The notes: a model not told the origin generated them from the letters alone. A stretch of 63,678 nt of DNA, filler included, from Guillardia theta CCMP2712 (GCF_000315625.1; 4 parts of 4 records of this genome joined end to end with filler, not necessarily neighbours in it); one strand, 5' to 3'; shown: positions 29,936-49,813, counted from the whole stretch's first letter. Made by a program: numbers and translations.

Positions 29936-32900
29936 TCAGTATTCCGTGGCATCCTCCTCCCTCCCTCCCTCTCTCCCTCCCTCCCTCACATGTCAACCGC
30001 CACTCACCGATCTCGTTATCGTCAAAGGAGGCTCCCATGAATCTGAGCCCGTGCTCTGAGTACAACTTGAACCCTCCTCCTGATATCGCCGAGCAGGTCC
30101 CGCACAAGTTGTCTGTGACCCCCAAGTTCTTGCATGTCTGATCAAGAGGGTTGCAGAACCCCTTGGGCCAGGGCCCAGGCCCAGGCGTGTAAGGAGTCTC
30201 TGGAGGCCACACGCCAAACTGTCCGGCCTTGCCTGCAGTATCGGACGGAGCCGCTGCCGAGACACTTCTGACACGCCTCTCTGCCCCTCTGGTGTCCGGC
30301 CCGCTGTACGTGAAATCCTGGTACACTCCTCCGTAGTTCTGGAATCCCACCAGCACCACGTCGTGGTCCCCAGCTTGAAGGTTGATGGAACCGCAAACTT
30401 TGTCCGCTCCGTGGAGCCCGTCGTTGTTGACGACCAGGTCACTGCCATAGTAGACCAGCGAGCCATCGTCAGAAGTAGAGCAGAAGCTGTAGATGCCTGA
30501 AATCATTATACGCACTTTTCCGTACACCTGCCATGCGTACTTAGCCTCGGGCGTGTTCGGGATCCAATTTCTCAGCTCTCCAAGGGTGCTGAACGCAATG
30601 AAGGAAATCTTGGCCTCGCCGACGAACTTCATGTGCGAGACATCTGGAACAAGCTCGAAGGGTTCGTAGTTGGTGGAGTACATCCGCATGGTCCACTCGG
30701 AGGGAGGAGGAAGGGAGGGGGCAGCCGTCGGCAAGCTGACCATGTGCCGGTACTGGTCCCCAGTGTCCGGGCCGGAGTAGGACGCGCTCTGATAAGCCTC
30801 TCCCCAATGGTTGAAGCCTTCAACGCGAACCTGGTGATCTCCTGGGTCCATCTTGATACTTGCACACTTCCTGTCGGCCCCGTGCAAGCCATCGTTGTTG
30901 ACGATGAGGTTGTCATCGACGAAGAGGTATGAGCCGTCATCAGAGGTCGAGCAGAAAGAGTAGATGCCAGGAGCGTTGATCTTGACGGTTCCGTAGTACA
31001 CCCACACAAAGTTGTTGTCTGGCATGCCAGGAATCATCCTCACAAACTCTCCGTTGTTGGGCACGTAGATATCTTTGTATGTCGCCTCGCCCACGAACGT
31101 CAAGAACGGCCAGTTTGCAAGAGCCATGTTCTGGATGTTGCTTCCTCTGAACAGCCGCACTGTCCATGCTGAGGGCTTGGGGGGAGCAGGTGCCTTGGAG
31201 CTGTCAGATCTGAGGTACCTCTTCACTCTGCCTGTGTCAGGCCCAATGTAGTGCGCAGCCATGTACGCTCCGCCGTAGTGCTGGAAGCCTGGAAGGAACA
31301 TGGCGTGGGTCCCTGCCGAGAGCGAGATATCTCCGCATTTCTCCTGTGCTCCGTGGAGACCGTCGTTGTCAACGACCATCTTGCCGTCTACGTACATGAA
31401 GGAACCGTCGTCGGAAGTGGTACAGAACGTGTATGTGCCGGCCCTGGTGACGTCCAGGTTGCCGTAGATGGCCCACACGTAGTTGTATGACGGCGTCTTG
31501 GGAACGGCGCTACGGAAATCGTCGAGGTCGTGGAAATCGATGTATGGAGTTTTGCCTTCCTCAACAAAGTTCAAGAACGCAAGGTCAGGCGTGTACGTCA
31601 GCTCCTGGGTCTCAGCCTGATACATCCTCATGGTGAAGGACGAAGGTGGAGGCAGGTCAGGTAGCTTGCCCTTGGAGCTGCCCTTACTCATCATCAGCAT
31701 CTCTCCTCCTCCTGTGTCTGGCCCAGCGTAGGTGATGCTCTGGTAGATCCCTCCCCCATGCTGGAAGCCTTCCACAGTGACGGAGTGAGATCCTGCCCGT
31801 AGCTGCGCATTCCCGCAAGCCCTAACAGCTCCATGGAGTCCGTTGTTCTCAACGAGCAAGTCGCCGTTGAGCAGCAGTCGGGACCCATCGTCCGACGTCG
31901 TGCACAAAGAGTAGGTCCCCGCAAACTCAACGTATAGCGACCCGTAGAAGATCCAGCTGTAGTCTGAGCTGGGTGTCTCAGCCACGTACTGACGAAGCTC
32001 TTCCAGGGAGTCGACGCGGACGGTCTCGATGTCCTTGGCGCTTCCAACGAAAGTGACCATGGGGGAGTCAGGGATGACCTGCCTCAGCTGTCAGATCGTC
32101 ACCTCCACGCCCAGCAGAGCCCCACCACTAGAGGTCTGTTCGATCTGAAAACCCGCAGGGCCCAGTCAGACGCCGGAGGCTTTTCTGGCAGGTTCGCCTC
32201 GGCGTCCTCGCTCCTAAGGAGCATCTTGTTGCCCAGGGTGTCTTGGCCCCTTGTCAAGCGTCAGAGCAGCGCGACTAGTCGCCAAGCATGTATACCTCCA
32301 GAAGGCGTGCAGGACGAAGGCGCCCGTGTTAACAAACGCCTTGACTCGGATGCGCACAGTTCCCTTTGTGACGTCAAAAGGGCGGCAGATCTCTCTAGTG
32401 GTGTGCAAGCCGTTGTTGTCAACCACGAGGTTGTCCTCCACAAATAGCTGCGACCTGCGTACGTCTCTCACCTTACACATGAGCAGCTGCTACCAGACCG
32501 TACCCGTCAGATGATGCAGTGCAGAAGTCGTAGGTGCCTCCGTTCTGGACCAGGATGTTTCCGTAGAACTCCACCGCAAAGTTTGACGCAGGCACCCCTG
32601 CGAAGTACTGCAGCAACGTGAGCCACGCGACCAGCCGTACACACGCATAAGTAGGAGGACAAGGTACTGCACTGACCTTGCGGAGTGTCTCGATGCCCTG
32701 GAAGTTGATGTATGGAATAGTGGTGCTCCCAAGGTACTTCATGGCATACATGGATGGGATGCTCAAAAGGGTCCCAGTCGACTCATACACCCGCACAGTC
32801 CAGCTTGATCGTGGTCTCTTGACAGCACCTTCAATCTGCGCACCCGTCACTCGTCTGTGTGGGGACCCTTCCATCATCCGCCAACCTTGAGAGACTGTAC

Positions 32901-35086
32901 GCGGTCGTTCCAGCCCTCCCAGACGAGACAGTCGACTTTTCGTGGGCCGACGTAGACGATCTTGTTACCTTCGAAGTACCTTTGATCGTACATGGTCACC
33001 TGGAGACAGGCCCCGTCAGCTTCATCATCAATCCCAAGGTCGAGATACCGAAAGTTTCTCCGGGATGTACAAGGAGGACAGTGAGTTTGCTTTCAGTCTG
33101 CAGTTATGCAAAGCACACATGTCTTGGTCGTTGTCGCACTCTCCATTGTTGAATACTTCCCATTCACCCTCCGGGAGGATTTGCTTCCATTCGGGGTCGT
33201 TGTTGGGATCTCCGCAGCTGCCCCCGAACACGACTTGATTCTTGTCAGTGCTGAGGTGAAACAGAAACGCACAGACGTCAGCAACGACGCTGAGCATACT
33301 CCCCTTCCCCGAGCTCACCTCGGCAAGCATGCATCCGGAGTGTAGCATTCTTCCCTCAACCGCCTCACGGTCTTGAAGCTCGAACGCACGTTCACCCTCA
33401 TGCCCTGGACGAGCACAAGTCAGCCCCCGCACGGGCACGCCAAGATTAGGTCAGTAGAGGACTGCCGGATCAAGCCGTACCTGGAACTGATCGTTGAGCC
33501 CCCAGCAGCATAAGCCAACATCGTCGGCATGCGTACATCCTTCGCCTCCACAGGTCTTGGGACAGTCGCCCATGTCCTCCTCAGTACCTTTGCCTGTGTG
33601 GAGCATCACAACACGTCCGAGCCGCAGAGACGAGCCTTACAAGCTACACGCGACAGCCATATGGGACCTTTGCCACCACCTTTTCTCAGGAGCTTGCCTC
33701 CTTCTTCGAACCCGATGTTGCGGCAAACCAGGTCGGCGGTGATCTGAGTGAAGCCTACTCCACACACAGTTCCCCAGACCTGAGCAGGACGTCATTAGGC
33801 CTCACACAAGATAGGACGCGAGACTCACTCCATTGTATAGGGTCTCAAGGCGGCAGGCCGAGTAATCACAATCAACAAGGCGGGTGTAGAGGTTTCCACC
33901 GCCAGGGCAGAAGTATCTGCCAGGCTTCCAACTCTCACCGACAGGAGCTGTACAAAGTACTTGAGGATCTAGCACATCGTTGTTTTGCATGGGCATACCT
34001 TCTCCCTGAATGCCATCCGGACCCATCGGGCCACTAATTCCAGTGATTCCGGTGACACCGCTGAAGCCTCTGACGCCTGATGATGTATCACAACTAGATT
34101 GTTCTGCACGCAACCTCCTCACCTGCAGGTCCTGGAAGTCCTTCGATCCCAGGCTTGCCCATGGGTCCTGCGAGGCCCTGAGGACCCTTTGGTCCTTGGG
34201 GCCCTTCAATGCCGTCGGCACCATTAGCTCCCGGGGAGCCATTCATACCTGCGACAAGTCAGTCGATGCTCGATATCTTCCGCGTACAAGTTGTTTCATC
34301 ATCTCTCTCTTCACTATCTGTAGCTTCATAAAGACTGCTTACCAGGCAAGCCGGGTGGACCTCTGCAACGCCGCCAAAAGAGCAAAGGAAGCAAACAAAG
34401 CACATTCAGCTCCTCATCACAGCACACTCTCTCAAAGCTCACTCTGGTCCTTGCACCAAGTGGTATGGAGCGCTGATGTCATCGGTCTCCTTTGTGTTGA
34501 GCTCTACTATCTCATCCTTCACGCCCGACACTGTGGACTTGACATACTCCGACAAATCCTTCTCCTGCTCATCAAGCTTCTCTGACATCTTGGCAGACTT
34601 CTTCAAGGCTTCCATGAGCCTGAAGTCAACATGAGCCAAGCATGCTCTTGGTGAGACACAATCAGATAGAGGGGCTCACCTCTTCATCCTCCTCTTCGAT
34701 ATGCTTTCCTCCTGAAGGAACGACTCGGGAACGTCCGGAGACTGGTCCTCATCACTTACTCCTGCTTGCGTGGAGGGCATGTAGTTGATGCCTCCTGCCT
34801 GCCCGTAGCTTGGAGGAGCTGAGATCTCTCCTTGAGATGAGAGAATCTGCTGTGTGGCTGGCTCCCATAACGCCTGTCCTTGGCTTCCGCCTAGCTCATA
34901 TTCTCCACTGTAAAGTTCGGATGGGGAAGTATGACGCAAGAGCGAGCGGGGAGAGGCGAGAGCGATGAAGACGATCATGGCAGCGAGGCCACCTATGGCC
35001 AAGTAGCTATATGCTCTGCTACCTCGAGCCGTCTGTGCCGTCTCCTCCGGCGCGGAAGGAAGTCTGTCTTCCTCTCCCCGCGCCAT
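29936..35086 (-). CDS. Copy A: type II membrane protein, TM-coiled coil-collagen-SRCR-beta/gamma-crystallin-5xPA14 + Cys-rich C-terminal extension (3' end runs toward gap)
   Basis: [17 protein letters not shown] (TM); 25 Gly-X-Y triplets over 4 exons; [15 protein letters not shown]...VCRNIGF...[10 protein letters not shown]...C...[11 protein letters not shown] (SRCR); NSLSSL...[11 protein letters not shown]...WNDRVQSLK (crystallin); five repeats with YGx..GTYxFC(T/S)xSDDGS...NDGLHG (PA14). Confidence 0.85.
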
Positions 35087-35549
35087 GGGCGGCGGCACTG
35101 TGAAGGGTCGATCCCAAGAGTCAGACCCAAAGAATTAAGTCAAAACAATCAACTGTACCCCCCACCCCCTTTGTGACCCTGGATGCCCTTGACCGGTGAT
35201 GGGAAACTCAAAAGAATATTCAGTTCAAATGGTCTCTGTAAAGTTCAAATGAACAAAAAGATATTCAATGATTTTTCTTGTTTGTTGCGTCAGAGAGTTC
35301 CGAAGTTGAATTTGAGTGTTCGCCTTGTACACAAACAATTAAAAAGTGAGGTTCAGATTTCGGCTCATGTTTACAATATATAAATGAATATATCAAATAT
35401 TTTGGGAAATGCTTTGGATTTGTTTCCCAAAATGCGATATTGTTTTATGCAAGAAAATTTTGCTTTATCAGTACAGTTTGTAGATATATAATTAATCTTT
35501 AAATAGTACGACTTTATATATAAATGAAGTTGAGTATATTTCTGTGGTA

Positions 35550-36960
35550 GTACAACTGCTGCTTGCGAAAAATAAAAAATACGGTAATAAATACCGAGTC
35601 TGCCTCAGAGACGTTTCCGGTCTTCCAGAATGCAGCGGCGGCAGGTGCAGGAGCACAACGCCCAGCATGCCTGTGCAGGGTGAGATCACAATGCAAGATT
35701 AAGCAAGAGTATCTTTCAACATGTTCATCTCGACAACGTGATAACTTCTGGCCTGATTCACAAGACTTACGTTGGTATTTGAGATCACCCTTGTACACCT
35801 TACAAGGATTCTTGCAACCAGGGCCCCACCGTGTGTATGTCTTCTCAAGAAGATGAACTTTTTGGCCTGCAGAAGTGACTTCTCAAGTCATTAAGACTGT
35901 TGCCATGACTGTTCAACAAGATTCTGTTTTATCCAGGAGAAAGTCAAGGGATGGATGGAGCAGCGTGGTCAGCATGAATCAGGTTTCAACTTGGAATTGA
36001 AAGTTTCAGGAAGGTGAATCGCACCAATCACATGAGTAATCAACTCATAATGGAAGCAATGACAGCCATTGCCATGTCATCGGAAACGAATACTCGTTCT
36101 GAACGGTTTGTTGTCAGGTTGTCGGAGTGCAGATAGGTTTTTGATCAGAGAGTGCAAGCCGCCAGCAGAATGGAAGACTGCAGGCGAAAACCAGACGGAT
36201 GTGTGAGCTGTGGTAGATGGATTGAACAAATCTCCAGTCTTCGAAGCAGAATGCATGGATATCCAAGAATGCAGCACCGATACCACATCGGGATGAGATT
36301 GACACATCACGAAAGAGTGTGGAATGAAATGTAGATTTGAACATTATGAATTAATGTAGAATGAAATGTGAGATTGATACATTATGAAAGAATGCAGAAG
36401 GAACTGTGTGATTGATACGTTATGCAAGTACGTGGAATGAATGTAAAATGTGCATCTGGTGTTTGGGTGGTTGTCACAATATTGCCCTGTCACCAGTCTT
36501 GATCTCTTTAGGTGGCTCAAATACATTGTTCAATTGTTGGTGGAATGTTTGATTTTGGGATGTTCTGATTGTTTGTTTCAAACCTTGTCTATCACTTGTT
36601 TCATACCATGGTCATGATTAATTACCACTCAACAACAAATGATTGATTTGGAGCATCTATTCAAACCGAGTAGTAGTTAGGGAGGAGTCTCTCCTTGATC
36701 ACAAATTCCTTCATGATGGAGGGAAAGTAGTTCAATTGTTTGAAAATTAAGGGCATCCTTTGAAATATGCTATGATATACATTCAGGCACCTTTATCACC
36801 ATGTTCTAAGTTGGTGATAATCTCACGTTTACCTCTTTAACGGTTCACTCAATCTTGTCCTTCTCACAACTTACACTTCACAGCCTTACAAACATTACCA
36901 TTCGCCACTTGATCATCTTGGTGTTTGTAAGTGTCTAATCACATGCAAGGTCACGTTCCC
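35550..36960 (-). mobile_element. Possible heavily decayed transposon/retroelement relic in the spacer
   Basis: AT-richer, TG/CA-rich sequence with broken protein-like frames (e.g. HYELITHVIGAIHLPETF). No intact domain. Confidence 0.25.
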
Positions 36961-37218
36961 TTCCTCTGCCCGCATTGCAGCATCTGCGGGACAAGTGAAC
37001 AATCATTATATTTATATTACTCATTCGTACAGAAAATTGTACCTTGCTACCGGGGTAAAACTAAATTTAAGTAGATATTTGTACTGAACATTTTAGCTTA
37101 CCAAGCATTCTGTAGACAAGCAGACGGTCAACGATAGGAGCAAGAGGGGGTAGGGGGTACCTTGTTGAGTAAAATCCAGGAGCCTGCTATCGAAGAGACA
37201 CTTCGGTGCGCTACCGCC

Positions 37219-40200
37219 ATGGCGCGGGGAGTGGAGGACGGACTCCCTTCCGCGCCGGAGGAGGAGGAGGAGGCGCGGAACAGGTGTCGAGGTAGCAGAG
37301 CATACAGCTACCTGGCCATAGGTGGCCTCGCTGCCATGATCGTCTTCATCGCTCTCGCCTCTCCCCGCTCGCTCTTGCGTCATACTTCCCCATCCGAACT
37401 TTACAGTGGAGAATATGAGCTAGGCGGAAGCCAAGGACAGGCGTTATGGGAGCCAGCCACACAGCAGATTCTCTCATCTCAAGGAGAGATCTCAGCTCCT
37501 CCAAGCTACGGGCAGGCAGGAGGCATCAACTACATGCCCTCCACGCAAGCAGGAGTAAGCGACAAGGACCAGTCTCCGGACATACCGCAGTCGTTCCTTC
37601 AGGAGGAAAGCATATCGAAGAGGAGGATGAAGAGGTGAGCCCCTCTATCTGATTGTGTCTCACCAAGAGCATGCTTGGCTCATGTTGACTTCAGGCTCAT
37701 GGAAGCCTTGAAGAAGTCTGCCAAGATGTCAGAGAAGCTTGATGAGCAGGAGAAGGATTTGTCGGAGTATGTCAAGTCCACAGTGTCGGGCGTGAAGGAT
37801 GAGATAGTAGAGCTCAACACAAAGGAGACCGATGACATCAGCGCTCCATACCACTTGGTGAAAGGACCAGAGTGAGCTTTGAGAGAGTGTGCTGTGATGA
37901 GGAGCTGAATGTGCTTTGTTTGCTTCCTTTGCTCTTTTGGCGGCGTTGCAGAGGTCCACCCGGCTTGCCTGGTAAGCAGTCTTTATGAAGCTACAGATAG
38001 TGAAGAGAGAGATGATGAAACGACTTGTACGCGGAAGATATCGAGCAGCGACTGACTTGTCGCAGGTTTGAATGGGGTTCCGGGGCTCAACGGTGCGGAC
38101 GGAGCTCCTGGTCCTCAAGGGCCAGTGGGCCCCCAGGGTTTCTCGGGGGCGATTGGAGTTCCTGGACACGAAGGGAAGAAAGGACTTCCAGGTGAGGAGG
38201 TTGCGTGCAGAACAATCTAGTTGTGATACATCATCAGGGGCCAGAGGGCCTATTGGTGTGACGGGTATCCCGGGCATGACCGGCCCGATGGGTCCGGATG
38301 GCGTTCAGGGAGGAGGTATGCCCATGCAAAACAACGATGTGCTAGATCCTCAAGTACGTTGTACAGTTTCACTAGCTGATAGCTGGAATCCTGGCCGATA
38401 CTTCTGTCCCAGTGGTGGAAACCTCTACACCCGCCTTGTTGATTGTGATTACTCGTCCTGCCGCCTTGAGACCCTATACAATGGAGTGAGTCTCGCGTCC
38501 TATCTTGTGTGAGGCCTAATGACGTCCTGCTCAGGTCTGGGGAACTGTGTGTGGAGTAGGCTTCACTCAGATCACCGCCGACGTGGTTTGCAGAAACATC
38601 GGGTTCGAAGAAGGAGGCAAGGCTCGTAGGAAGGGTGGAGGCCAAGGTCCCATATGGCTGTCGCGTGTAGCTTGTAAGGCTCGTCTCTGCGGCTCGGACG
38701 TGTTGTGATGCTCCACACAGGCAAAGGTACTGAGGAGGACATGGGCGACTGTCCCAAGACCTGTGGAGGCGAAGGATGTACGCATGCCGACGATGTTGGC
38801 TTATGCTGCTGGGGGCTCAACGATCAGTTCCAGGTACGGCTTGATCCGGCAGTCCTCTACTGACCTAATCTTGGCGTGCCCGTGCGGGGGCTGACTTGTG
38901 CTCGTCCAGGGCATGAGGGTGAACGTGCGGTCGAGCTTCAAGACCGTGAGGCGGTTGAGGGAAGAATGCTACACTCCGGATGCATGCTTGCCGAGGTGAG
39001 CTCGGGGAAGGGGAGTATGCTCAGCGTCGTTGCTGACGTCTGTGCGTTTCTGTTTCACCTCAGCACTGACAAGAATCAAGTCGTGTTCGGGGGCAGCTGC
39101 GGAGATCCCAACAACGACCCCGAATGGAAGCAAATCCTCCCGGAGGGTGAATGGGCAAGATTTAGCAACAATGAGTGCGACAACGACCAAGACATGTGTG
39201 CTTTGCATAACTGCAGACTGAGAGCAAACTCACTGTCCTCCTTGTACATCCCGGAGAAACTTTCGGTATCTCGACCTTGGGATTGATGATGAAGCTGACG
39301 GGGCCTGTCTCCAGGTGACCATGTACGATCAAAGGTACTTCGAAGGTAACAAGATCGTCTACGTCGGCCCACGAAAAGTCGACTGTCTCGTCTGGGAGGG
39401 CTGGAACGACCGCGTACAGTCTCTCAAGGTTGGCGGATGATCGAAGAGTCTCCACACAGACGAGTGACGGGTGCGCAGATTGAAGGTGCTGTCAAGAGAC
39501 CACGATCAAGCTGGACTGTGCGGGTGTATCAGTCGACTGGGCCCCTTCTCAACGTCCCATCCATGTACGCCATGAGGTACCTTGGGAGCACCACTATTCC
39601 ATACATCAACTTCCAGGGCACCGAGACACTCCGCAAGGTCAGTGCAGTACCTTGTCCTCCTACTTATGCGTGTGTACGGCTGGTCGCGTGGCTCACGTTG
39701 CTGCAGTACTTCGCAGGGGTGCCTGCGTCAAACTTTGCGGTGGAGTTCTACGGAAACATCCTGGTCCAGAACGGAGGCACCTACGACTTCTGCACTGCAT
39801 CATCGGACGGGTACGGTCTGGTAGCAGCTGCTCATGTGTAAGGTGAGAGACGTACGCAGGTCGCAGCTATTTGTGGAGGACAACCTCGTGGTTGACAACA
39901 ACGGCTTGCACGGCTCCAGAGAGATCTGCCGCTCGTCGTACGTCAACAAAGGCCTTGTTCACATCCGAGTCAAGGCGTTTGTTAACACGGGCGCCTTCGT
40001 CCTGCACGCCTTCTGGAGGTATACATGCTTGGCGACTAGTCGCGCTGCTCTGACGCTTGACAAGGGGCCAAGACACCCTGGGCAACAAGATGCTCCTTAG
40101 GAGCGAGGACGCCGAGGCGAACCTGCCAGACAGGCCTCCGGCGTCTGACTGGGCCCTGCGGGTTTTCAGATCGAACAGACCTCTAGTGGTGGGGCTCTGC

Positions 40201-42116
40201 TGGGCGTGGAGGTGACGATCTGACAGCTGAGGCAGGCGATCCCCGACTCCATCATGGTCACTGCAGTCGGAAGCGCCAAGGACATCGAGACCGTCGGGGT
40301 CAGCTCACTGGAAGAGCTTCGTCAGTACGTGTCTGAGACGCCCAGCTCAGACTACAGCTGGATCTTCTACGGGTCGCTATACGTTGAGTTTGCGGGGACC
40401 TACTCTTTGTGCACGACGTCGGACGATGGGTCCCGACTGCTGCTCAACGGCGAATTGATCGTTGAGAACAATGGACTCCATGGAGCTGTTAGGGCTTGCG
40501 GGAATGCGCAGCTACGGGCAGGATCTCACTCCGTCACTGTGGAAGGCTTCCAGCATGGGGGAGGGATCTACCAGAGCATCACCTACGCTGGGCCAGACAC
40601 AGGAGGAGGAGAGATTCTGATGATGAGTAAGGGCAGCTCCAAGGGCAAGCTACCTGACCTGCCTCCACCTTCGTCCTTCACCATGAGGATGTATCAGGCT
40701 GAGATCCAGGAGCTGACGTACACGCCTGACCTTGCGTTCTTGAACTTTGTTGAGGAAGGCAAAACTCCATACATCGACTACCACGACCTCGACGATTTCC
40801 GCAGTACCGTTCCCAAGACGCCGTCATACAACTACGTGTGGGCCATCTACGGCAACCTGGACGTCACCAGGGCCGGCACATACACGTTCTGTACCACGTC
40901 CGACGACGGATCCTTCATGTACGTAGACGGCAAGATGGTCGTTAACAACGACGGTCTCCACGGAGCACAGGAGAGATGCGGAGATATCTCGCTCTCGACA
41001 GGGACCCACGCCATGTTCCTTCCAGGCTTCCAGCACTACGGCGGAGCGTACATGGCTGCGCACTACATTGGGCCTGACACAGGCAGAGTGAAGAGGTACC
41101 TCAGATCTGACAGCTCCAAGGCACCTGCTCCCCCCAAGCCCTCAGCATGGACAGTGCGGCTGTTCAGAGGAAGCAACATCCAGAACATGGCTCTTGCAAA
41201 CTGGCAGTTCTTGACGTTCGTGGGCGAGGCGACATACAGAGATATCTACGTGCCCAACAACGGAGAGTTTGTGAGGATGATTCCTGGCATGCCAGACAAC
41301 AACTTTGTGTGGGTGTACTACGGAACCGTCAAGATCAACGCTCCTGGCATCTACTCTTTCTGTTCGACCTCTGATGACGGCTCATACCTCTTCGTCGATG
41401 ACAACCTCATCGTCAACAACGATGGCTTGCACGGGGCCGACAGGAGATGTGGAAGTGTCAAGCTGAACCCAGGAGATCACCAGGTTCGCGTTGAAGGCTT
41501 CAACCATTGGGGAGAGGCTTATCAGAGCGCGTCCTACTCCGGCCCGGACACTGGGGACCAGTACCGGCACATGGTCAGCTTGCCGACGGCTGCCCCACCT
41601 CTCCCTCCTCCCTCCGAGTGGACCATCCGGATGTACTCCACCAACTACGAACTCCATCACGTTCCGGATGTCTCGCACATGTCGTACGTCGGGGGGGCCA
41701 AGATTTCCTACATCCAGTTCAGCACCCTTGGAGAGCTGAGAAATTGGGTCCCGAACACGCCTGATTCCAAGTACGCATGGCAGGTGTACGGAAAAGTGCG
41801 TGTGATCATTGCAGGCACCTATACCTTCTGCTCTACTTCTGATGATGGTTCAATTGTCTACTTTGGCAACCAACAAGTTGTCAACAACGACGGGCTGCAT
41901 GGGGGTGTGAAGGTTTGCGGTTCCATCAACCTTCAAGCTGGGGACCACGACGTGGTGCTGGTGGGCTTCCAGAACTACGGAGGAGTGTACCAGGACTTCA
42001 CGTACAGCGGGCCGGACACCAGAGGGGCAGAGAGGCGTGTCAGAAGTGTCTCGGCAGCTGCACCTGCGAGTACTGCAGGCACTTCTGGGCAGTTTGGCAG
42101 GTGGCCTCCGAACTGA
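37219..42116 (+). CDS. Copy B: inverted paralogue, same domain order, ends GRWPPN* after fifth PA14
   Basis: Exons 37219-37634, 37695-37871, 37952-37971, 38066-38191, 38238 onward, and a long last exon through 42116. Same motifs as copy A. Confidence 0.88.
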
Positions 42117-43187
42117 TCAGCAGTGTACTTGCCGCTGCCGCGGTGCAACTTCGAATCAGTTATGCCTCACTGATTGATGATTTTTCATTCTCCTCACTTT
42201 GGGTTTGCGCTTTATTAACAACGAGATGCGGGGGTTGAGTTAGGCGGGCCGTGATCGAGTTGAAGTGAATGAGCGAGACCTTATTTCTTGTGACCTAGAG
42301 TTTTGATATTGAAAGCTTTTACTTCCAGTTTCACCGAGTGATTCCCCCCTCGCAAGTCCGAGGCCCGGCCTGAGTGTTGCCCGGCTCGGCCCGCCGGAAC
42401 TGCAGTGGCAGTGAGAGTTCCGATCCCGGCGAATTATAATTTTGAGCAATCCGTGTTTCAGTACCAGTGACTTTTATATTGAAGTACGGTGACTGTAAAC
42501 TTCAGATATCACTTGGGTACAACACATAGAACCATGATGGTACAGAATCGGAATATGAAATATTTTATTTTGTACCTTTTTGATACTGTATCGGAAATAT
42601 TTCATACTAAGGTACCGAGAAGGCCTGTTCACTAAAACATTTTGTTGAAATATTTGTACTGAACTAAAAGTAATGTAAATCTATGTACTATTATATGAGT
42701 TATACGGATCTCCATACAGGAAGGTTTTAATCTAAAAACCCCAAAAAGGTAATTGTAAATTCGTGCGGAATGTACAGGAATGGTGTACATGTCTGTGCGG
42801 GAGCGAGGGGGTAGGAGGAGACAGAGGAAGGAGGAGGAGGGGACTAGGAGAGTAACTCCACCTGCCATGACGGTGAGGGCGATTGCAGAGCAAGAAGGAA
42901 GCTGGTGAGAACGGTGGAGATGAAGGGGAGAGGAACACAGGCGCATGGGCTCAAAAGGCAGGTGTTGGCATGTAGGAAGGGGAGACACTTGAAGGTGAGC
43001 GGGACAGTAGCAGGAGGTGGTGAATGAAGCTAGCAGATGTGCCAGGCTGTAGCAAGTCTGTCTCCTCCCTGGGCTCGGTCGACTCCGTGAAGTGTCGCCA
43101 GCACCATTGAACGCCATCGGCTGTGGGACGGACCTTGCTTAAAGCTCTACTGCGGCGATGCTGCTGCAATCCCATTGATGTGGTGAT

Positions 43188-46100
43188 ATGGCCATGGAAG
43201 CAAGCCTGCAGACTGCAAATGTCTTGATAGAAGACGCAGAGCAAGACAAGAACATCTTGCTGTGGGCCAGGGAGGAACCTAGTGAGGCTTTCGGCGGCGA
43301 AGCACTTGATGACGGCAAGGCCCTGGTGGGTCTGCGTGCCGACCCAGCCTCCGAGAACTGGGAGGACGACTTCGACTTTGACTCACCTTCCTGCGATGCG
43401 TTTCCTGCTCCTCCTCAGGCTGACAGGTTGAAGAGCAAGAGCAAGCTCAAGGCCCACAACCAGAGCAGCCTTGGAGCACCGGAGCGCAACAACTTGGAGG
43501 AGCTGCTCAAAGTCTTGCCGGACCTGTCGATCGATGCTAACTGTCTTGATGACTTGTGCCGTCTGTTCTCCAGCTCAAACTCAGGTCTCTTCACCGTCAA
43601 AACTCTTTTGAAGGACGTCCAATCCATGTACAACTCATTCCATGATAAATATGTGGTCGAGAAATTCAACGGCAAATCGAGAACGAGGATCGAGGACCTC
43701 GAACAGAATCTTACAGACGCCATGGAAAGTAAGTGTTTACAAGCAGAGCTCTCGGCCTGTCTTGAGCTTGCCCGGACATATCGTGCCAAGTCCCAACAGG
43801 GGGCAGCGATGTTGAAGTTGCAACGTGCGCAGACGGCATTGCAGACCGCCGAGCAGAACTTGACGGGCGAAGAGGGCAGCGAAGCTTCCGGAGAGCTGAT
43901 CACGGAGGCTCACATCCTTCATGAGATGGCCATCACGGCCAGGAAGATACAGGATCTGAACGCGGCGAAAGCTTACCTGGAACGTGCCTTCTTCTCGATC
44001 TCGTCCTCCAAGAGCCTGTCTCCGCTGTGGTCACCGTTGTGGCTGCGGCTGCATGTTGACTCTGGCATCTTGGCTCTCTCTCTCGGCTCGACCAAGACTG
44101 CGTTATGGCACTTCTCTCAGTACCTTGCGGGCCTCGTTGCAAGGCAGCCTTCGCTGTCTGTAGATACGCTCGTCAAGTATGACTCAAACGACCAAACTGT
44201 GAAATATTATGAGGAGCTGTTCATGGGATGTTTCTTTGTCGGAGCCACGTTGCAATGCTCGATGGCGCCTGACTTGGCCTTGACCTTCATCAAGTACTCG
44301 ATTGCCACCTATAAATTCATGGAGATGCAGAAGATTGAAAACGCCCCAAGAAAGCTGAAGGTTGTTATTTGCTGGTACAAGGAAGCAATGTACACGTCTC
44401 AGGCTACGCACGATTGCCCGTCAGTGAATGAGGATGACAGCCTGTACTTGTCTGAAGACGAGGAGAACGCTGATGTGGATTTTGACGAGCAGATGGACGA
44501 TTTCGGGTCCAACGAGGGGAAGCAGAACGAGGATCAGGCGGAGAAGTCGGTGGAGGAGGATGATGAGTTCGATGAGGAGGACGAGGATTGGGACAGAGAG
44601 CTTGAGATTGAGGCCATGCTGAGGGGAGAAACCTCTGAGAGCATCTCAAGGGAGTCTTCGCGCTCGAGCCTGTTCACGGGCAGCAGGGCGTCGGAGAACA
44701 TTGAGATGGGACTAGGTCAGTCAGGCGACTCCCTCCCTGAGAGGTGGGTGTTCTCAAAGACTCTGTCCGGCAAGTCTGTGAAGCCAGTCATCATCATGTA
44801 CCCCAAGGTCAGCCCGCTGTACTCGATCAGATCCAAGAGGATCATGAGTGAGGCCGCTACCCAACAATGGCTCGAGGGACTGATCAAGAGCCAGAGGCAA
44901 AGTTACTTGCTCCACAGCCAGGCTGCTAACTACGAAGGGATCGACGAGAGGCTGAAGAACGCTGAGCGGTCCCTTCGGGATTGGACGATTCTGTGCGTTC
45001 AGTATTGCCACGTCCTGTTTCGATTGCCGGATGCCAGCCAACATTTCTGGAAGTATGCGGACATCTTCTTCAGAGGCGTCGCAGAGAGCAAGTTGATGCA
45101 GAGGGAGAGGGATTGGAAGACGACGGAGGCAGAGGACAAGCTCGTGTGGTTGGCTGTGATGCGAGCTTGCGAGTCAGTGACGTTGATGGCGTCCCAGCTG
45201 TGGACCAGCTCGTCCAAAAACGATTTCTTGCGCTTCCTTAAGATCTCTCGAGAGGTTTCGAGGAGGAAGAATGACTACTTCTACGACGTGATGGAGCTTG
45301 AGACGTTTGCGCACCATCGCTCCTCCGAGATGTTCTCCTCTGTCATCCCTGGTTTTTGCAGGATCTTCTTGAGCGCGATCAGGAGGGAGCGAGACGAGCC
45401 TCCCTCCAACGCAGATGCAGACACCACCGTCATCGAGTGGGGAGGAGAAGCCAGGCAGCTGGAGGACTGGGGGCGCCTGGAGAAGGGGAACCTGTCATCC
45501 GGCGAGATGGGTTGGACCAGCTTCGAGGCTCAGGCGGCGGCTCTGGCGGACATCCAACTGTGTCTCAAGGGCCGGTCGCCGATCACCGCAAGGGAGGTAG
45601 TGCACGACATGAAGGGGCACAAGCAGGAGAACCCTGTGGAGTGGCAGGATGGTGACGTGGACATGCCTGACATGGTCAGCCTCGACCGCCTCCTCCTCGA
45701 CGAGGAGTACAGGATCAGCCTGCTAGCGGACATCTACCCCAAGACTCGACCCGACCTCTTCCTGCGTGCCAAGTGCGCCTTCGTCCTCGGCAACTTCTAC
45801 CTTCAGCAGAAGGAAGGGGCAGGCAGGGTCAAGGCGGAGCAGCTCTTGCTGGAGAGCCTGTACATCCTTGACAACTGCGCTCAGCCCGTCCCAGGGATCA
45901 AGTTTCTTGTGTCGAGCTTGGGAGAGGTCGTGCTGCAGGCGTACGCTGCAGTCCTCCTCGAGAACAACAAGTACAAGTACGGAGTGCTGGCGCTGGAGGC
46001 AGCGGCGGAGTGTCAGAAGCTGAGGACGGGGGTAGAGCCCCAGCAGCTCTACCGGCAGCTGGCTATGGTCTGCACTGAGCATGGGGACTACGAGAGGAGC

Positions 46101-48142
46101 TTGAGGTACTACTCGATCGTGCTGGGGAAGGCGAGGCAAGACGGCAAGTCCAACGAGTTCATCTTTGTGAGCGAGAGGGTCTCGGACATCCTGGTAGAGC
46201 ACGGGGACTTCGCGCAGGCTGAGCAGATCCTCCTTGCTGCGATCGCGTTCCTGCAGGAGGAGAGGAAGGACAAGAAGGACAGCAGCTCCCTCGAGGGCCT
46301 CCTCAACGCTGCCAACGACATGGAGCTGGAGTACCTGGCCAGCTACAAGAACCTTGACACCAGATTCCTCCGCATCCTGATGAAGCTGTCAAAGATCCAC
46401 CTCGATGGGTACGAGACGGTCAAGGGGGTCCGCATCCTCAAGAAGCTCCTCTCCCGCTCCCTCCCCGCCAGCAAGAAGGCAAGCATCCAGGCCCTCCTCG
46501 CCACCGGGCACTACGAGCTCTGGCAGACAGCTGAGTGCGACGCCTGCCTGGCCTCTGCTGCCGCTGCGACGTCCTCGGGCTTTGCTGAGGTGCTGTCCGG
46601 GCCCGAGCTGTTCGCCATTACCCTCCTGGGGTGTAAAAATCTCCTCAGGTCAGGACGAGCCGTGGAGGCGCTCAAGAAGATAGACGAGGCGATAGCAGGG
46701 GAGACCCGCCTCAGCGGCATCGGCCAGCTCTTCCTCCTCCGTGGCAAGGTGCTGCAGACGCTGGCGTGCCGGTCGGAGGGGGACGCTAGTGTCCTGCCCT
46801 CCTTCTCTTCCACGCTGGATCTGTGGAGGGGGGCGGCTGAATCAATGCACATGGCCATGGACGCGTTCTCTCGCGTCGGGGATCGAAGCATGGAGTCTAA
46901 GGCCGCGTGCTGCTATGCTCAGGTGCGGCTGGACGCCATATGGTGCCCCTGCGTCCTGCTGAAGAAGCAGTGGGAGACGACGCTGTTCAAGACGGCACCG
47001 AAGGACTTCGTGTCGAGGAGCGCTCTCCACTCGCCCATGCTCGGGCCAGGGATGAGGAGGAGGGAGACAAAGTCTTCCATGGGGAGCAGCGGGAACATGA
47101 ACACTCGGATGTCGGCAGCATCGAGGGCAAGCAGCATGGGCAGCAGCACCTCCCCGCACCTCAACGCCATCGACTCGGACCCCCTGTGCTCCATCGAGCG
47201 AGCTTCCATCTTCGGGCTCGAGGAGAACGCGGCGACGCTATCGGACATCATGACCCTCCTCCGGTCGCACCTCAACATGGCGGAGATCCGCTGGCTGCAG
47301 GGCAGGAGGAGCGCGGCCATGGCACACTTCCTCGAGTGCCGCGACCTCTTCTTCGGCCTCTTCGTCTCTCCAGCTGGGAACGTGCTGGTGTCGGACGGCC
47401 CCCTGGCGTTCACCAGGGCGATCCTGGGGATCCTGAACAGGATGGCGAGGTTTGTGCTTGTGTGGGATAAGGTGACCATCAACCACCACATCGCCATCTT
47501 CGACACGATCCTGAACCTCGAGGTCGACCTCGGGTTCTCGTCGTCGCACGGCATGGAGGAGGGCAGGGCGTCGGAGAACGGCAGGAGGGTGTGGTCGCTG
47601 CTGCATTCCATGCGCTGCATCGGAAGGTTGGGCAACAACAGGAGGCTAAGCAAGGAGGACGTACAGAGGAGAAACCTGAACACCCTCAGGAAGATCTGGA
47701 GGGTTTGTACGAGCTCGGCCACAGTAATCACTGCAAGCATGCGAGCCGACGCAGGGCAGCTGGAGCAGGCGGGCAGATCGCCATCGATGAAGCCCCTCCC
47801 TCTCCGACCTCCGCCTCCTCCATGCAACGTGCTGAACCTGTGCCTGGACTCTGACCTTGTGTCCCGTCACATCTACATCTTGTGCCTGATGGAACAGTTC
47901 TTGGCGATCTACAGCCCATACGCCGGCCTGCTAGAGGCACGGATCTTGGGGACGGGAGACAGCGGAGGAATGTTTGACCAGACGTCCCTTGCGGTGATAG
48001 GAGACTTTGTGCAAGGGCTGTCTTCCAGGAGGGAACTAGGTGGGCAGGCGATGGGTGGGAGCGAAGATCCAGCCAAGAAGGACGCGGCGAATCAGGTGGG
48101 CACTGTTTGCTGCTGCTGCTGCTGATGATGATGATGATGACA

Positions 48143-48180
<38 letters not shown>

Positions 48181-49738: not shown

Positions 49739-49813
<75 letters not shown>

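What the first reader, a model, noticed from the sequence alone, without database searches (positions are those of the whole stretch)
37219..42116. Class A scavenger-receptor-like membrane collagen with crystallin + five PA14 lectin domains in a unicellular alga
Seen: the hand-spliced protein has a short cytosolic N-tail, one signal-anchor TM, a heptad coiled coil (37699-37840), 25 uninterrupted Gly-X-Y triplets, an SRCR domain, a beta/gamma-crystallin motif and five PA14 repeats. Established: TM-coiled coil-collagen-SRCR in type II topology is the architecture of animal class A scavenger receptors (MSR1/SR-AI, MARCO, SCARA5), which are trimeric pattern-recognition receptors. PA14 domains with adjacent Asp-Asp (SDDG) bind glycans in a Ca2+-dependent manner (Flo5/Epa1 adhesins). 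Inference: this is a convergently assembled trimeric surface receptor displaying about 15 lectin heads, for bacterial/prey, virus or mate recognition or adhesion. The collagen and SRCR parts are invisible in the ORF track because they are split over micro-exons.
Basis: partly seen in the sequence, partly recalled or inferred. Interest (0 to 1): 0.9.

Follow-up and report, generated by a model that had tools for sequence, protein, structure and literature searches.

The report
Cryptophyte membrane collagen with lectin repeats
The alga Guillardia theta expresses a 16-exon gene for a membrane-anchored, probably trimeric protein with the layout of animal class A scavenger receptors (anchor, coiled coil, collagen, SRCR) followed by a beta/gamma-crystallin domain and five PA14 lectin-type domains; the family is found across cryptophytes, its function is untested, and no searched paper describes it.

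Summary
Window 37219-42116 (+) is one gene of Guillardia theta CCMP2712 with 16 exons and 15 GT-AG introns of 46-94 nt. One spliced 4240-nt transcript contig joins every exon; a DNA run keeps the introns. The 1338-aa product has these parts:
- a 28-aa N-tail and one hydrophobic anchor;
- a coiled coil and 25-26 unbroken Gly-X-Y triplets;
- an SRCR domain (Pfam above threshold on one exon alone);
- a true beta/gamma-crystallin domain (profile and fold);
- five PA14 repeats, four of them with the SDDG motif that aligns with the calcium-binding DcisD motif.

A three-copy model of a 51%-identical relative's coiled coil plus collagen scored 0.49, against 0.00 for the best control.

GenBank already holds a 1321-aa "hypothetical protein" model here with Collagen, SRCR and PA14 hits. 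Relatives occur in Hanusia, Rhodomonas, Teleaulax and many marine metagenome or metatranscriptome contigs. No searched paper describes the family.

I read it as a trimeric multivalent glycan-binding surface protein, analogous to membrane collectins and class A scavenger receptors but not shown to share their descent. Ligand and role are untested.

New here: an inverted paralogue (35086-29936, -) whose introns are 99.3% identical to this gene while the collagen exons differ by 24-34%. Gene conversion with retained divergent exon patches explains this best.

The parts
37219..42116 (+). Gene A: complete coding region, 16 exons, 1338 aa, stop at 42114-42116
   Evidence: Spliced transcript contigs in X1 and X4 and unspliced DNA contigs in X13. 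GT-AG at all 15 introns and a single open frame. NCBI gene model with the same start and stop.
37219..37302 (+). N-terminal tail, aa 1-28: acidic run followed by an Arg-rich stretch next to the anchor
   Evidence: Translation. Four Arg within 12 residues before the hydrophobic segment, against two after it. It is one of the patches that differ from paralogue B (72% aa identity).
37303..37362 (+). Single hydrophobic segment, aa 29-48: signal anchor, or possibly a cleaved signal peptide
   Evidence: Kyte-Doolittle maximum 2.06 at aa 30. N-terminal hydrophobic segments also in P0178 of G. theta, P0236 of Rhodomonas and P0257 of Teleaulax.
37618..37695 (+). Basic motif KRRMKR, aa 134-139, spanning intron 1, just before the coiled coil: candidate R-x-K-R convertase site
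   Evidence: Read from the sequence. Kept as SKRRMKR, SQKRMKR or RSKRRMKK in relatives, but SHKRMKK in P0252, so not strictly conserved. Cleavage is inference only.
37695..37863 (+). Coiled-coil segment in exon 2, aa about 140-190
   Evidence: Heptad-like spacing of hydrophobic residues in the translation. In the three-copy model of the homologous stretch of P0154, contacts recur every 3-4 residues (67, 70-71, 74, 77-78, 81 ...).
37864..38314 (+). Collagen triple-helix region, aa 196-272, over the end of exon 2 and exons 3, 4 and 5, with introns 2-4 between
   Evidence: 25-26 unbroken Gly-X-Y triplets. Pfam Collagen 9.5e-8 on exon 4 and 0.0037 on exon 5. Continuous three-chain contacts in the model of the homologous stretch.
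38367..38833 (+). SRCR domain, aa about 285-390, over exons 6-8
   Evidence: Pfam SRCR on exon 7 alone: 2.3e-7, 31.5 bits, cut-off 26.1. Full-domain hits of 1e-14 to 1e-18 in relatives. The Hanusia orthologue hits the MARCO, SCARA5, SR-AI and CD163 SRCR domains in the PDB.
38910..38995 (+). Linker with two conserved Cys (CYTPDxC), exon 9
   Evidence: Conserved columns in alignment A1. A short helix in the model.
39064..39428 (+). Beta/gamma-crystallin domain, exons 10-11, aa about 425-530
   Evidence: Family profile against the PDB: Protein S 7e-8, clostrillin 3.9e-7, flavollin 3.2e-6, betaB2-crystallin 1e-4. AF2 model pLDDT 86.3. Foldseek top 15 all beta/gamma-crystallins, probability 1.0, target TM about 0.8. 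Pfam on exon 11 alone was only weak.
39479..40131 (+). PA14 repeat 1, aa about 536-693, exons 12-15; carries SSDG instead of SDDG
   Evidence: Internal similarity to repeats 2-5. Motif positions. Five PA14 stretches in relatives.
40132..42059 (+). PA14 repeats 2-5 (boundaries about 40132, 40659, 41130, 41601), each with TSDDG and N(N)DGLHG
   Evidence: Pfam PA14 1.1e-33, four stretches. Repeat 3 model pLDDT 92.8. Best PDB folds are sugar-binding PA14 domains of RTX adhesins, RsgI and Epa/Flo. SDDG aligns with the DcisD motif of RsgI3 PA14A.
29936..35086 (-). Paralogue B in inverted orientation: same 16-exon structure, frame open to the contig edge, with a C-terminal Cys-rich extension that gene A lacks
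   Evidence: 94.4% DNA identity over 4904 bp. All splice sites kept and the frame open for at least 1423 aa. Copy-B variants seen in DNA run X13.
35087..37218 (.). AT-rich (41% GC) spacer between the two divergently oriented genes; no similarity between its two halves
   Evidence: The homology between A and B starts 2 nt before the ATG.

Best explanation
Gene A encodes a membrane-anchored, homotrimeric, multivalent carbohydrate-binding surface protein of the cryptophyte cell.

Proposed mechanism:
1. The N-terminal hydrophobic segment inserts the chain with the short N-tail in the cytosol (type II).
2. The coiled coil next to the membrane brings three chains into register and starts a triple helix of about 75 residues, which forms a rigid stalk.
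3. The stalk holds out three copies of SRCR, beta/gamma-crystallin and (PA14)x5.
4. The PA14 repeats that keep the Asp-Asp motif (four per chain, about 12 per trimer) bind sugars through a bound calcium ion. Weak single-site affinity becomes strong binding to repeated glycans on bacteria, other cells, viruses or the cell's own surface coat.
5. A basic motif (KRRMKR) before the coiled coil may allow release of the ectodomain by a kexin/furin-type protease, as in animal membrane collagens.

Shown here: the gene model, its expression, the order of the domains, the identity of each domain, and family conservation in four cryptophyte genera.

Supported by modelling only: trimer formation.

Inferred: topology, surface location, calcium and glycan binding, shedding, and the biological role.
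For: - A single spliced transcript joins all exons, and the frame is open.
- The only strongly hydrophobic segment is N-terminal, and more Arg lie on its N side.
- Collagen and SRCR pass Pfam thresholds on single exons. The SRCR domain of the Hanusia orthologue matches the MARCO, SCARA5 and SR-AI domains.
- The beta/gamma-crystallin domain is supported by profile and by fold.
- The PA14 fold is closest to Ca-dependent sugar-binding PA14 domains.
- SDDG aligns with the DcisD motif of RsgI3 PA14A. At the same place the inactive PA14B of that protein has N-G, which PMC6852018 reports as unable to bind calcium or pectin.
- S81, D83, G84 and the loop G138-P139-x-T141 are invariant or nearly invariant over 78 repeats.
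- Three-copy model of the relative's coiled coil plus collagen: ipSAE 0.49 against 0.00 for the best of three controls, at least 82% of contacts shared between runs, partner pLDDT at least 74. That mark was reached by 21 of 30 proteins solved as homo-pairs and 0 of 23 solved as single chains.
- The same architecture, with an N-terminal anchor, is seen in complete ORFs of Rhodomonas (P0236) and Teleaulax (P0257).
- Sister architectures swap in other lectin modules: a C-type lectin in P0180 and P0077, discoidin and laminin-G in P0191. That fits a glycan-recognition role.
Against: - No experiment bears on location, oligomer state or ligand.
- The trimer test used a 51%-identical relative, not the window's own chain. 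The test is calibrated on two copies, not three, and collagen-like trimers may score from the model's memory.
- The hydrophobic segment ends in A-L-A-S-P, so it could be a cleaved signal peptide. The protein would then be secreted.
- The Asn or other ligands of the second calcium-binding loop could not be checked.
- PA14 domains also occur in non-lectin settings.
- Whether G. theta hydroxylates proline in this protein is unknown.
- G. theta is not known to me to take up prey, so the 'prey receptor' role lacks a physiological basis (own knowledge).
Confidence: 0.6

Rival explanations
1. It is a structural protein of the cell covering or matrix, not a receptor. The N-terminal segment is a cleaved signal peptide, or the chain is cut at KRRMKR. 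The soluble collagenous trimer is then built into the fibrillar surface layer of the periplast, with the PA14, SRCR and crystallin domains cross-linking it to glycans of the plates.
For: - The hydrophobic segment ends in an Ala-x-Ala-like site.
- A basic R-x-K-R motif lies right before the coiled coil in most relatives.
- Contig depths in the transcript runs are high, though depth is a poor measure of expression.
- Collagen stalks are typical matrix elements. Cryptophytes have a proteinaceous surface periplast (own knowledge).
Against: - An N-tail of 28 residues before a 19-20-residue hydrophobic core fits a signal anchor better than a signal peptide.
- The basic motif is not strictly kept: P0252 has SHKRMKK.
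- No periplast proteome links this protein to the covering.
Confidence: 0.22
2. It is a cell-cell recognition or agglutination protein of the sexual or life-cycle stage. The A and B copies give two distinct homotrimers, because their collagen X-Y residues and last PA14 repeat are kept different.
For: - The patches kept divergent between A and B, against homogenising gene conversion, are the N-tail, the collagen X-Y positions, part of SRCR and PA14-5.
- Short and long forms are kept in both Guillardia and Hanusia.
- PA14 adhesins mediate self-recognition in yeasts (PMC6852018 and the papers listed).
Against: - dN/dS is below 1 in all patches except the N-tail, so there is no sign of the rapid adaptive change typical of gamete-recognition proteins.
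- The transcript was found in ordinary culture transcriptomes from several studies.
- A sexual cycle has not been described for G. theta (own knowledge).
Confidence: 0.08
3. It is an artefact: two adjacent genes fused by hand-splicing, an animal contaminant, or a mis-assembled palindrome.
For: - Collagen plus SRCR is an animal-like combination.
- Copy B lies at the very start of the contig, where mis-assemblies tend to occur.
Against: - One transcript contig spans all 16 exons with no differing letters.
- The flanking gene is G. theta GUITHDRAFT_148091 at 100% identity.
- The introns are short GT-AG introns and sit in the same DNA as G. theta genes.
- Orthologues exist in transcriptomes of three other cryptophyte genera.
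- Copy-B-specific variants are present in DNA run X13. That run may, however, be the source of the assembly.
Confidence: 0.03

Closest known systems
Vertebrate class A scavenger receptors with SRCR (SR-AI/MSR1, MARCO, SCARA5)
   Same: - Same order of elements: short N-terminal tail, one membrane segment, spacer, alpha-helical coiled coil, collagenous Gly-X-Y region, SRCR domain.
- The class A receptors are homotrimeric type II proteins (PMC8353498 abstract).
- The SRCR sequence of the Hanusia orthologue matches their SRCR domains: MARCO 3.2e-17, SCARA5 4.8e-14, SR-AI 5e-13.
- WGTVC motif present (PMC4491621).
- The SRCR domain lacks the Cys aligned to the fourth Cys of the CD163 domains and is coded by several exons. 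Both are typical of group A SRCR domains (own knowledge).
   Different: - The SRCR domain is internal, followed by about 950 more residues (beta/gamma-crystallin plus five PA14).
- No evidence of shared descent of the whole protein. The class A family has been traced only within vertebrates (PMC4491621).
- The Lys cluster of the SR-A collagen domain is not conserved: gene A has GKKG and copy B does not.
- The likely ligand-binding parts are lectin domains, not the collagen region.
Membrane collectin CL-P1 (SCARA4/COLEC12) and soluble collectins (MBL, SP-A, SP-D)
   Same: - Coiled coil plus collagen stalk presenting three (or a multiple of three) calcium-dependent lectin heads.
- CL-P1 is also type II membrane-anchored (own knowledge).
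- The relatives P0180 and P0077 carry a true C-type lectin domain in the same frame.
   Different: - The lectin module is PA14, repeated five times in tandem, not a single C-terminal C-type lectin domain.
- In collectins the coiled-coil neck lies after the collagen; here it lies before it, as in class A receptors.
PA14 adhesin lectins (Marinomonas MpIBP PA14, RTX-adhesin PA14 6m8m, clostridial RsgI PA14, yeast Flo5/Epa1)
   Same: - Same fold, with best Foldseek hits of 5e-8 to 1e-6.
- Profile hits to RsgI PA14 of 2e-23.
- The Asp-Asp motif sits at the DcisD position (PMC6852018).
- Tandem PA14 dyads exist in RsgI.
   Different: - About 18-21% identity only.
- The second calcium loop could not be assigned.
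- No other known case of five PA14 domains on a collagen stalk.
- Repeat 1 has lost the first Asp.
Microbial beta/gamma-crystallins (Protein S, spherulin 3a, clostrillin, flavollin)
   Same: A single two-Greek-key domain of about 90 residues. These are the best sequence-profile and fold matches.
   Different: - It is embedded in a large multidomain protein.
- The first Greek key is atypical and carries extra Cys.
- The calcium-binding N/D-N/D-x-x-S/T-S motifs are only partly kept (ANSLSS and NDRVQS, read).
Animal membrane collagens and collagen-like type II proteins shed by furin (collagens XIII, XVII, XXIII, XXV, ectodysplasin-A, gliomedin)
   Same: Type II anchor, juxtamembrane coiled coil that starts the triple helix, and a basic R-x-K/R-R site between membrane and helix (own knowledge for the animal proteins; motif).
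   Different: - Cleavage is untested here and the motif is not strictly conserved.
- Very different C-terminal domains.
Introns more alike than exons in duplicated genes under gene conversion (human red and green opsin genes)
   Same: For the A/B pair: introns 0.7% different, exons 6.1% different, with divergent patches confined to exons. The opsin precedent rests on my own knowledge.
   Different: - This is an inverted, divergently transcribed pair.
- The retained patches reach 24-34% nucleotide difference.
- Homology stops exactly at the limits of the coding region.

Membership tests
Collagen triple helix repeat (PF01391) | An unbroken run of Gly-X-Y triplets that passes the Pfam gathering score | tested here: met
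   25-26 triplets at aa 196-273. Exon 4 alone scores 32.1 bits against a cut-off of 27.2. Relatives score 2.7e-11 to 1.4e-13.
Collagen triple helix repeat (PF01391) | Actual formation of a three-chain helix | tested here: inconclusive
   The three-copy model of relative P0154:59-213 scores ipSAE 0.49 against 0.00 for the best control, with continuous contacts at 128-208. This is a model, on a relative, and may come from the model's memory. No CD or collagenase data exist.
SRCR domain (PF00530) | Profile match above the gathering score, with the conserved Cys and WGTVC framework | tested here: met
   Exon 7 alone scores 31.5 bits against a cut-off of 26.1. The full domain scores 55-66 bits in relatives. 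PDB SRCR matches down to 3e-17.
Class A scavenger receptors (SCARA1-5) | Domain order: N-cytoplasmic tail, membrane segment, coiled coil, collagenous region, then SRCR in SCARA1, MARCO and SCARA5 | tested here: met
   The order is the same up to and including SRCR.
Class A scavenger receptors (SCARA1-5) | SRCR (or a C-type lectin domain) as the C-terminal, outermost domain | tested here: not met
   SRCR ends near aa 390 of 1338. A beta/gamma-crystallin domain and five PA14 repeats follow.
Class A scavenger receptors (SCARA1-5) | Common descent with the vertebrate genes (orthology or paralogy of the whole protein) | not tested
   No phylogeny was made. The family has been traced only within vertebrates (PMC4491621). 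Outside the SRCR domain and the Gly-X-Y repeats, no sequence match to animal proteins appeared.
Class A scavenger receptors (SCARA1-5) | Type II topology and polyanion binding | not testable with these tools
   Only hydropathy and flanking charge are available. No topology predictor or binding assay was on hand.
Beta/gamma-crystallin fold (PF00030 / PF08964) | Pfam gathering score | tested here: not met
   Exon 11 alone: Crystall 13.3 bits and Crystall_3 16.1 bits, both below their cut-offs. The best relatives reach 22.9 bits (P0077, cut-off 25) and 26.2 bits (P0180). Only single exons of the window's own protein could be scanned.
Beta/gamma-crystallin fold (PF00030 / PF08964) | Two Greek-key motifs forming the beta/gamma-crystallin domain fold | tested here: met
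   The family profile hits Protein S, clostrillin, flavollin, betaB2-crystallin and spherulin 3a at 7e-8 to 7.5e-4. The AF2 model has pLDDT 86.3. Fold matches have probability 1.0 and target TM 0.78-0.85. The model is of relative P0157, 46-53% identical to exons 10-11 of the window.
PA14 domain (PF07691) | Profile match above the gathering score, and the PA14 beta-barrel fold | tested here: met
   116.6 bits with four stretches. Model pLDDT 92.8. PDB PA14 domains top the fold search.
Ca-dependent PA14 lectins (Flo5/Epa1/MpPA14/RsgI type) | Asp-cis-Asp motif at the calcium-binding position | tested here: met
   TSDDG in repeats 2-5 aligns with TDDG of RsgI3 PA14A and ADDG of 6m8m. Repeat 1 has SSDG, so four of five repeats meet the feature. 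The cis peptide bond itself cannot be checked.
Ca-dependent PA14 lectins (Flo5/Epa1/MpPA14/RsgI type) | Asn and main-chain ligands of calcium-binding loop 2, and measured sugar binding | not testable with these tools
   The conserved G-P-D-T-G loop lies where loop 2 is expected, but no coordinates or binding data were available.

The most novel reading that the evidence does not exclude
Cryptophyte algae have independently built a collectin or scavenger-receptor-type innate recognition system. This would be a family of trimeric, collagen-stalked membrane receptors with interchangeable lectin heads (PA14, C-type lectin, discoidin, laminin-G). The cell would use them to recognise bacteria, viruses or grazers such as Mesodinium. 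The inverted A/B gene pair would be kept as two non-mixing homotrimers by selection against gene conversion in the collagen exons.
Probability: 0.15. Interest if true: 0.85.

Novelty: new variant of a known kind. Interest (0 to 1): 0.58.

Why it matters
Collagen-stalked trimeric lectins and scavenger receptors are treated as animal innate-immunity inventions. The class A family has been traced only within vertebrates.

Here an expressed, conserved protein with the same anchor, coiled-coil, collagen and SRCR core is found in a cryptophyte alga. Related versions occur in Teleaulax, the prey and plastid source of the ciliate Mesodinium (own knowledge), and in Rhodomonas and Hanusia. So this way of presenting many weak glycan-binding sites on a rigid stalk has arisen, or been kept, far outside animals.

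It gives a concrete candidate for cell-surface recognition in an ecologically important algal group, and it can be tested with ordinary biochemistry. The A/B pair is also a clean natural example of gene conversion homogenising introns while selected exon patches stay apart.

Tried and rejected
Searches that gave nothing or little:
2. Pfam on the single exons 6, 8, 9, 12, 13, 14 and 15 gave nothing. These are fragments of domains, so this is not evidence of absence.
3. The exact GenBank 1321-aa protein could not be retrieved. Two word-based searches missed it, so its 17-aa difference from the transcript-based 1338-aa model was not located.
4. The protein-atlas search on residues 100-560 of P0236 gave no usable hit.
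5. P0002 is not on record in the look-up of encoding contigs. Its source, Hanusia phi, came from the listing of cluster members instead.
6. Paper searches linking Guillardia or cryptophytes with SRCR, PA14, scavenger receptor or collagen found no description. Subscription journals are not covered.

Explanations for exon-only divergence that I considered and set aside:
7. Exon-targeted hypermutation or mutagenic retro-homing. Mismatches are richest at third codon positions (68/57/118) and dN/dS is below 1, which fits old, purified divergence.
8. cDNA-mediated conversion across exons 4-7. That would have deleted the introns between them.
9. Conversion from the third G. theta paralogue GUITHDRAFT_144953. 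It is only about 65% identical in DNA, and its collagen region, compared by eye, resembles neither copy's patch.
10. A third gene copy suggested by the 105-nt 'skip' at 38075-38181 in DNA run X13. This is best read as copy B's divergent exon 4, together with the copy-B variant at 38022.

Other readings rejected:
11. Gene-fusion artefact and contamination.

Full report
**1. What is there**

The piece is the start of Guillardia theta CCMP2712 contig JH993152.1. The neighbouring open frame 43188-48125 is 100% identical to GUITHDRAFT_148091. Window position 29936 corresponds to position 1 of the contig.

Reading 36800-42600 and laying public runs on 37000-42400 gives a gene of 16 exons from 37219 to 42116 on the + strand.
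- Thirteen of the fifteen junctions are listed as GT..AG joints in spliced contigs of run X1, and most also in X4. These are two different studies.
- None of these joints stands in DNA run X13, which carries the introns.
- One X1 contig of 4240 nt covers 37212-42327 without a single differing letter.
- The two junctions around the 20-nt exon 3 are too short-sided to be listed. They follow from the contig's length bookkeeping.

Joining the exons gives 4017 nt, one open frame and 1338 aa. Every intron is GT-AG and 46-94 nt long. GenBank already has a model with the same start and stop (1321 aa) and precomputed Collagen, SRCR (weak) and PA14 hits.

**2. The domains, tested one by one**

- **Anchor.** The only strongly hydrophobic segment is aa 29-48, preceded by an Arg-rich stretch.
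- **Coiled coil.** Exon 2 (aa 139-197) has hydrophobic residues at 3-4 spacing.
- **Collagen.** Aa 196-273 are 25-26 unbroken Gly-X-Y triplets, with 15 Pro in X or Y positions. Pfam Collagen passes its threshold on exon 4 alone.
- **SRCR.** Pfam SRCR passes its threshold on the 46-aa exon 7 alone (31.5 bits). Full-length relatives score 55-66 bits. The SRCR domain of the Hanusia orthologue, 87% identical to gene A's, matches solved domains of MARCO (3e-17), SCARA5, SR-AI, M2BP, LOXL2 and CD163.
- **Beta/gamma-crystallin.** On exon 11 alone this call was weak. An alignment of 14 relatives plus the two window exons (A1) hits microbial and lens beta/gamma-crystallins in the PDB at 7e-8 to 1e-3. 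An AlphaFold2 model of that stretch in the relative P0157 (pLDDT 86) finds only beta/gamma-crystallins at the top of a Foldseek search. It is a real, complete domain coded by exons 10-11.
- **PA14.** Four PA14 domains are found in the last exon (1.1e-33). The fifth, repeat 1 in protein order, is split over exons 12-15 and is shown by repeat-to-repeat similarity. A model of repeat 3 (pLDDT 93) is closest to the sugar-binding PA14 domains of bacterial RTX adhesins, to clostridial RsgI sensors and to yeast Epa/Flo adhesins.

In a profile alignment the family's invariant S-D-D-G falls on the T-D-D-G of RsgI3 PA14A. The corresponding N-G of PA14B lies at the same place. PMC6852018 identifies exactly these residues as the DcisD calcium site, and reports that the N-G variant binds neither calcium nor pectin. 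Repeats 2-5 have TSDDG and repeat 1 has SSDG. Four heads per chain, not five, therefore look competent.

**3. Oligomer state**

The run of Gly-X-Y triplets after a coiled coil implies a trimer, on established knowledge of collagens, collectins and class A receptors. As a check, three copies of the homologous coiled coil plus collagen of relative P0154 (51% identical) were modelled.
- ipSAE was 0.49 in each of three runs, against 0.00 for the best of three controls.
- At least 82% of contacts were shared between runs, and partner pLDDT was at least 74.
- The mark was reached by 21 of 30 proteins solved as homo-pairs and by 0 of 23 solved as single chains.
- The tool warns that three copies lie outside its calibration and that a pass may come from memory.
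- Contacts recur in a heptad pattern through residues 67-117 and are continuous through the Gly-X-Y region.

This supports trimerisation but does not show it.

**4. Relatives**

An exhaustive search with the PA14 exon found 10,493 proteins with E-value up to 0.001. Only a small set also matches the N-terminal half. Word-based searches and cluster look-ups give a family of about 50% identity with the same Collagen, SRCR and PA14 content.

Named members are all cryptophytes:
- G. theta GUITHDRAFT_144953 (P0178, a third paralogue on another contig);
- Hanusia phi (P0002, P0211);
- Rhodomonas abbreviata (P0236);
- Teleaulax amphioxeia (P0257).

The rest are unnamed marine metagenome or metatranscriptome contigs. 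Complete ORFs of Rhodomonas and Teleaulax also start with a short tail and a hydrophobic segment. Sister architectures keep the coiled coil, collagen and SRCR core but carry other lectin-type modules: a C-type lectin plus crystallin plus PA14 in P0180, and discoidin plus laminin-G in P0191. Outside this family, the only animal proteins matched were SRCR or collagen proteins hit through those domains alone.

**5. How it most likely works**

See the best explanation. I read it as a type II, homotrimeric, collagen-stalked, multivalent PA14 lectin at the cell surface, possibly shed at a basic motif. The closest analogues in working principle are the membrane collectin CL-P1 and the class A scavenger receptors.

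It fails one structural criterion of the class A family, because its SRCR domain is internal. Its common descent with them is untested, so I do not file it as a member.

The main rival is a secreted structural component of the periplast surface. The two differ mainly in whether the N-terminal segment is retained, which I could not decide.

**6.

A search of the piece with the protein found a second copy on the minus strand, 35086 down to the contig edge at 29936. At the DNA level it is 94.4% identical over 4904 bp. All splice sites are kept and the frame stays open.

Homology starts 2 nt before the ATG and ends 7 nt before gene A's stop. The 2.1-kb AT-rich spacer between the genes has no internal symmetry. 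Beyond that point copy B reads on into a Cys-rich extension that is cut by the contig edge.

The differences are very unevenly placed.
- Introns have 6 mismatches in 883 aligned bases (0.7%).
- Exons have 243 mismatches in 3998 aligned bases (6.1%). Fisher p = 8e-15.
- Collagen exons 4 and 5 differ by 34% and 24%, while the introns beside them differ by 0-2%.
- Synonymous divergence is 0.77 in the collagen region and 0.13 overall. dN/dS is below 1 except in the N-tail.
- Third codon positions carry most of the changes.

Hanusia has the same two forms. The short one (P0215) ends ...WPPS like gene A. The long one (P0214) continues ...WPPE plus an extension like copy B. The two are 99.4% identical to each other. 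In the divergent patches copy B is closer to Hanusia than to gene A (collagen 79% against 69%; PA14-5 86% against 82%).

The simplest reading is an old short/long gene pair, older than the split of Guillardia and Hanusia, whose gene bodies are kept alike by gene conversion. In G. theta a few exon patches have escaped, probably because selection keeps them different: the N-tail, the collagen X-Y residues, part of SRCR, parts of PA14-1 and PA14-2, and PA14-5. A more-diverged donor for gene A's patches cannot be excluded. Different collagen X-Y residues would be one way to keep A and B chains from mixing in one trimer. That last point is speculation.

**7. Novelty and verdict**

Each building block is a known domain, and public databases already list the protein as hypothetical. 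The searched literature contains no description of it or of any cryptophyte collagen-SRCR-lectin family. I rate it a new variant of a known kind, the collagen-stalked trimeric lectins and scavenger-type receptors, in an unexpected lineage. It is of moderate to good interest, and its function is still to be shown.

Noticed in passing
window 29936-35086 (-) against 37217-42109 (+): Inverted, divergently oriented paralogue pair. Introns are 99.3% identical and exons 93.9%; collagen exons 4 and 5 are only 66-76% identical. Homology is confined to ATG-2 through stop-7. Best read as concerted evolution by gene conversion, with divergent exon patches retained.
   Followed up: yes
window 29936-30201 (-); P0214:1235-1552; C-terminal ends of P0236 and P0257: The long forms (copy B and the Hanusia, Rhodomonas and Teleaulax proteins) carry one or two copies of a Cys-rich C-terminal module of about 150 aa (...[10 protein letters not shown]...HWYGNC...KVDCYF). 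It has no Pfam match. Gene A and the Hanusia short form lack it.
   Followed up: partly
window 37618-37695 (aa 134-139, KRRMKR): A basic R-x-K-R-type motif directly before the coiled coil, kept in most relatives but not all (P0252 has SHKRMKK). It is a possible convertase or shedding site, as in animal membrane collagens.
   Followed up: partly
L003:10001-14589 (G. theta contig JH993058.1): Third G. theta family member, GUITHDRAFT_144953 (1300 aa, 54% identical, with a short N-tail and a hydrophobic segment). It is not part of an inverted pair within the 10 kb read upstream of it; the fetched locus ends at the gene's own 3' end, so downstream was not read.
   Followed up: partly
window 43188-52040 (+): Neighbouring gene GUITHDRAFT_148091 (2275 aa in GenBank, first exon a 1645-aa open frame). 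It has no Pfam domain; among the candidates scored, the only match besides its own GenBank record was a Hanusia phi protein (86% identical).
   Followed up: no
window 49026-50909: Dense pyrimidine-rich microsatellites: TCTCC x33, a 16-mer x21 and CCT x62. They give a GC skew of -0.6 and lie inside the 43188-52040 span of the GenBank model of the neighbouring gene.
   Followed up: no
window 36294-36441: A 38-nt tandem repeat (3.9 copies) in the AT-rich spacer between the two divergent genes. Possibly promoter-associated; not examined.
   Followed up: no
window 41887-42400: The raw-read RNA run X20 covers almost only the 3' end (42068-42400), with first mates on the + strand, which looks like a 3'-tag library. 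Transcript contigs end near 42327, which places the poly(A) region about 210 nt after the stop.
   Followed up: no
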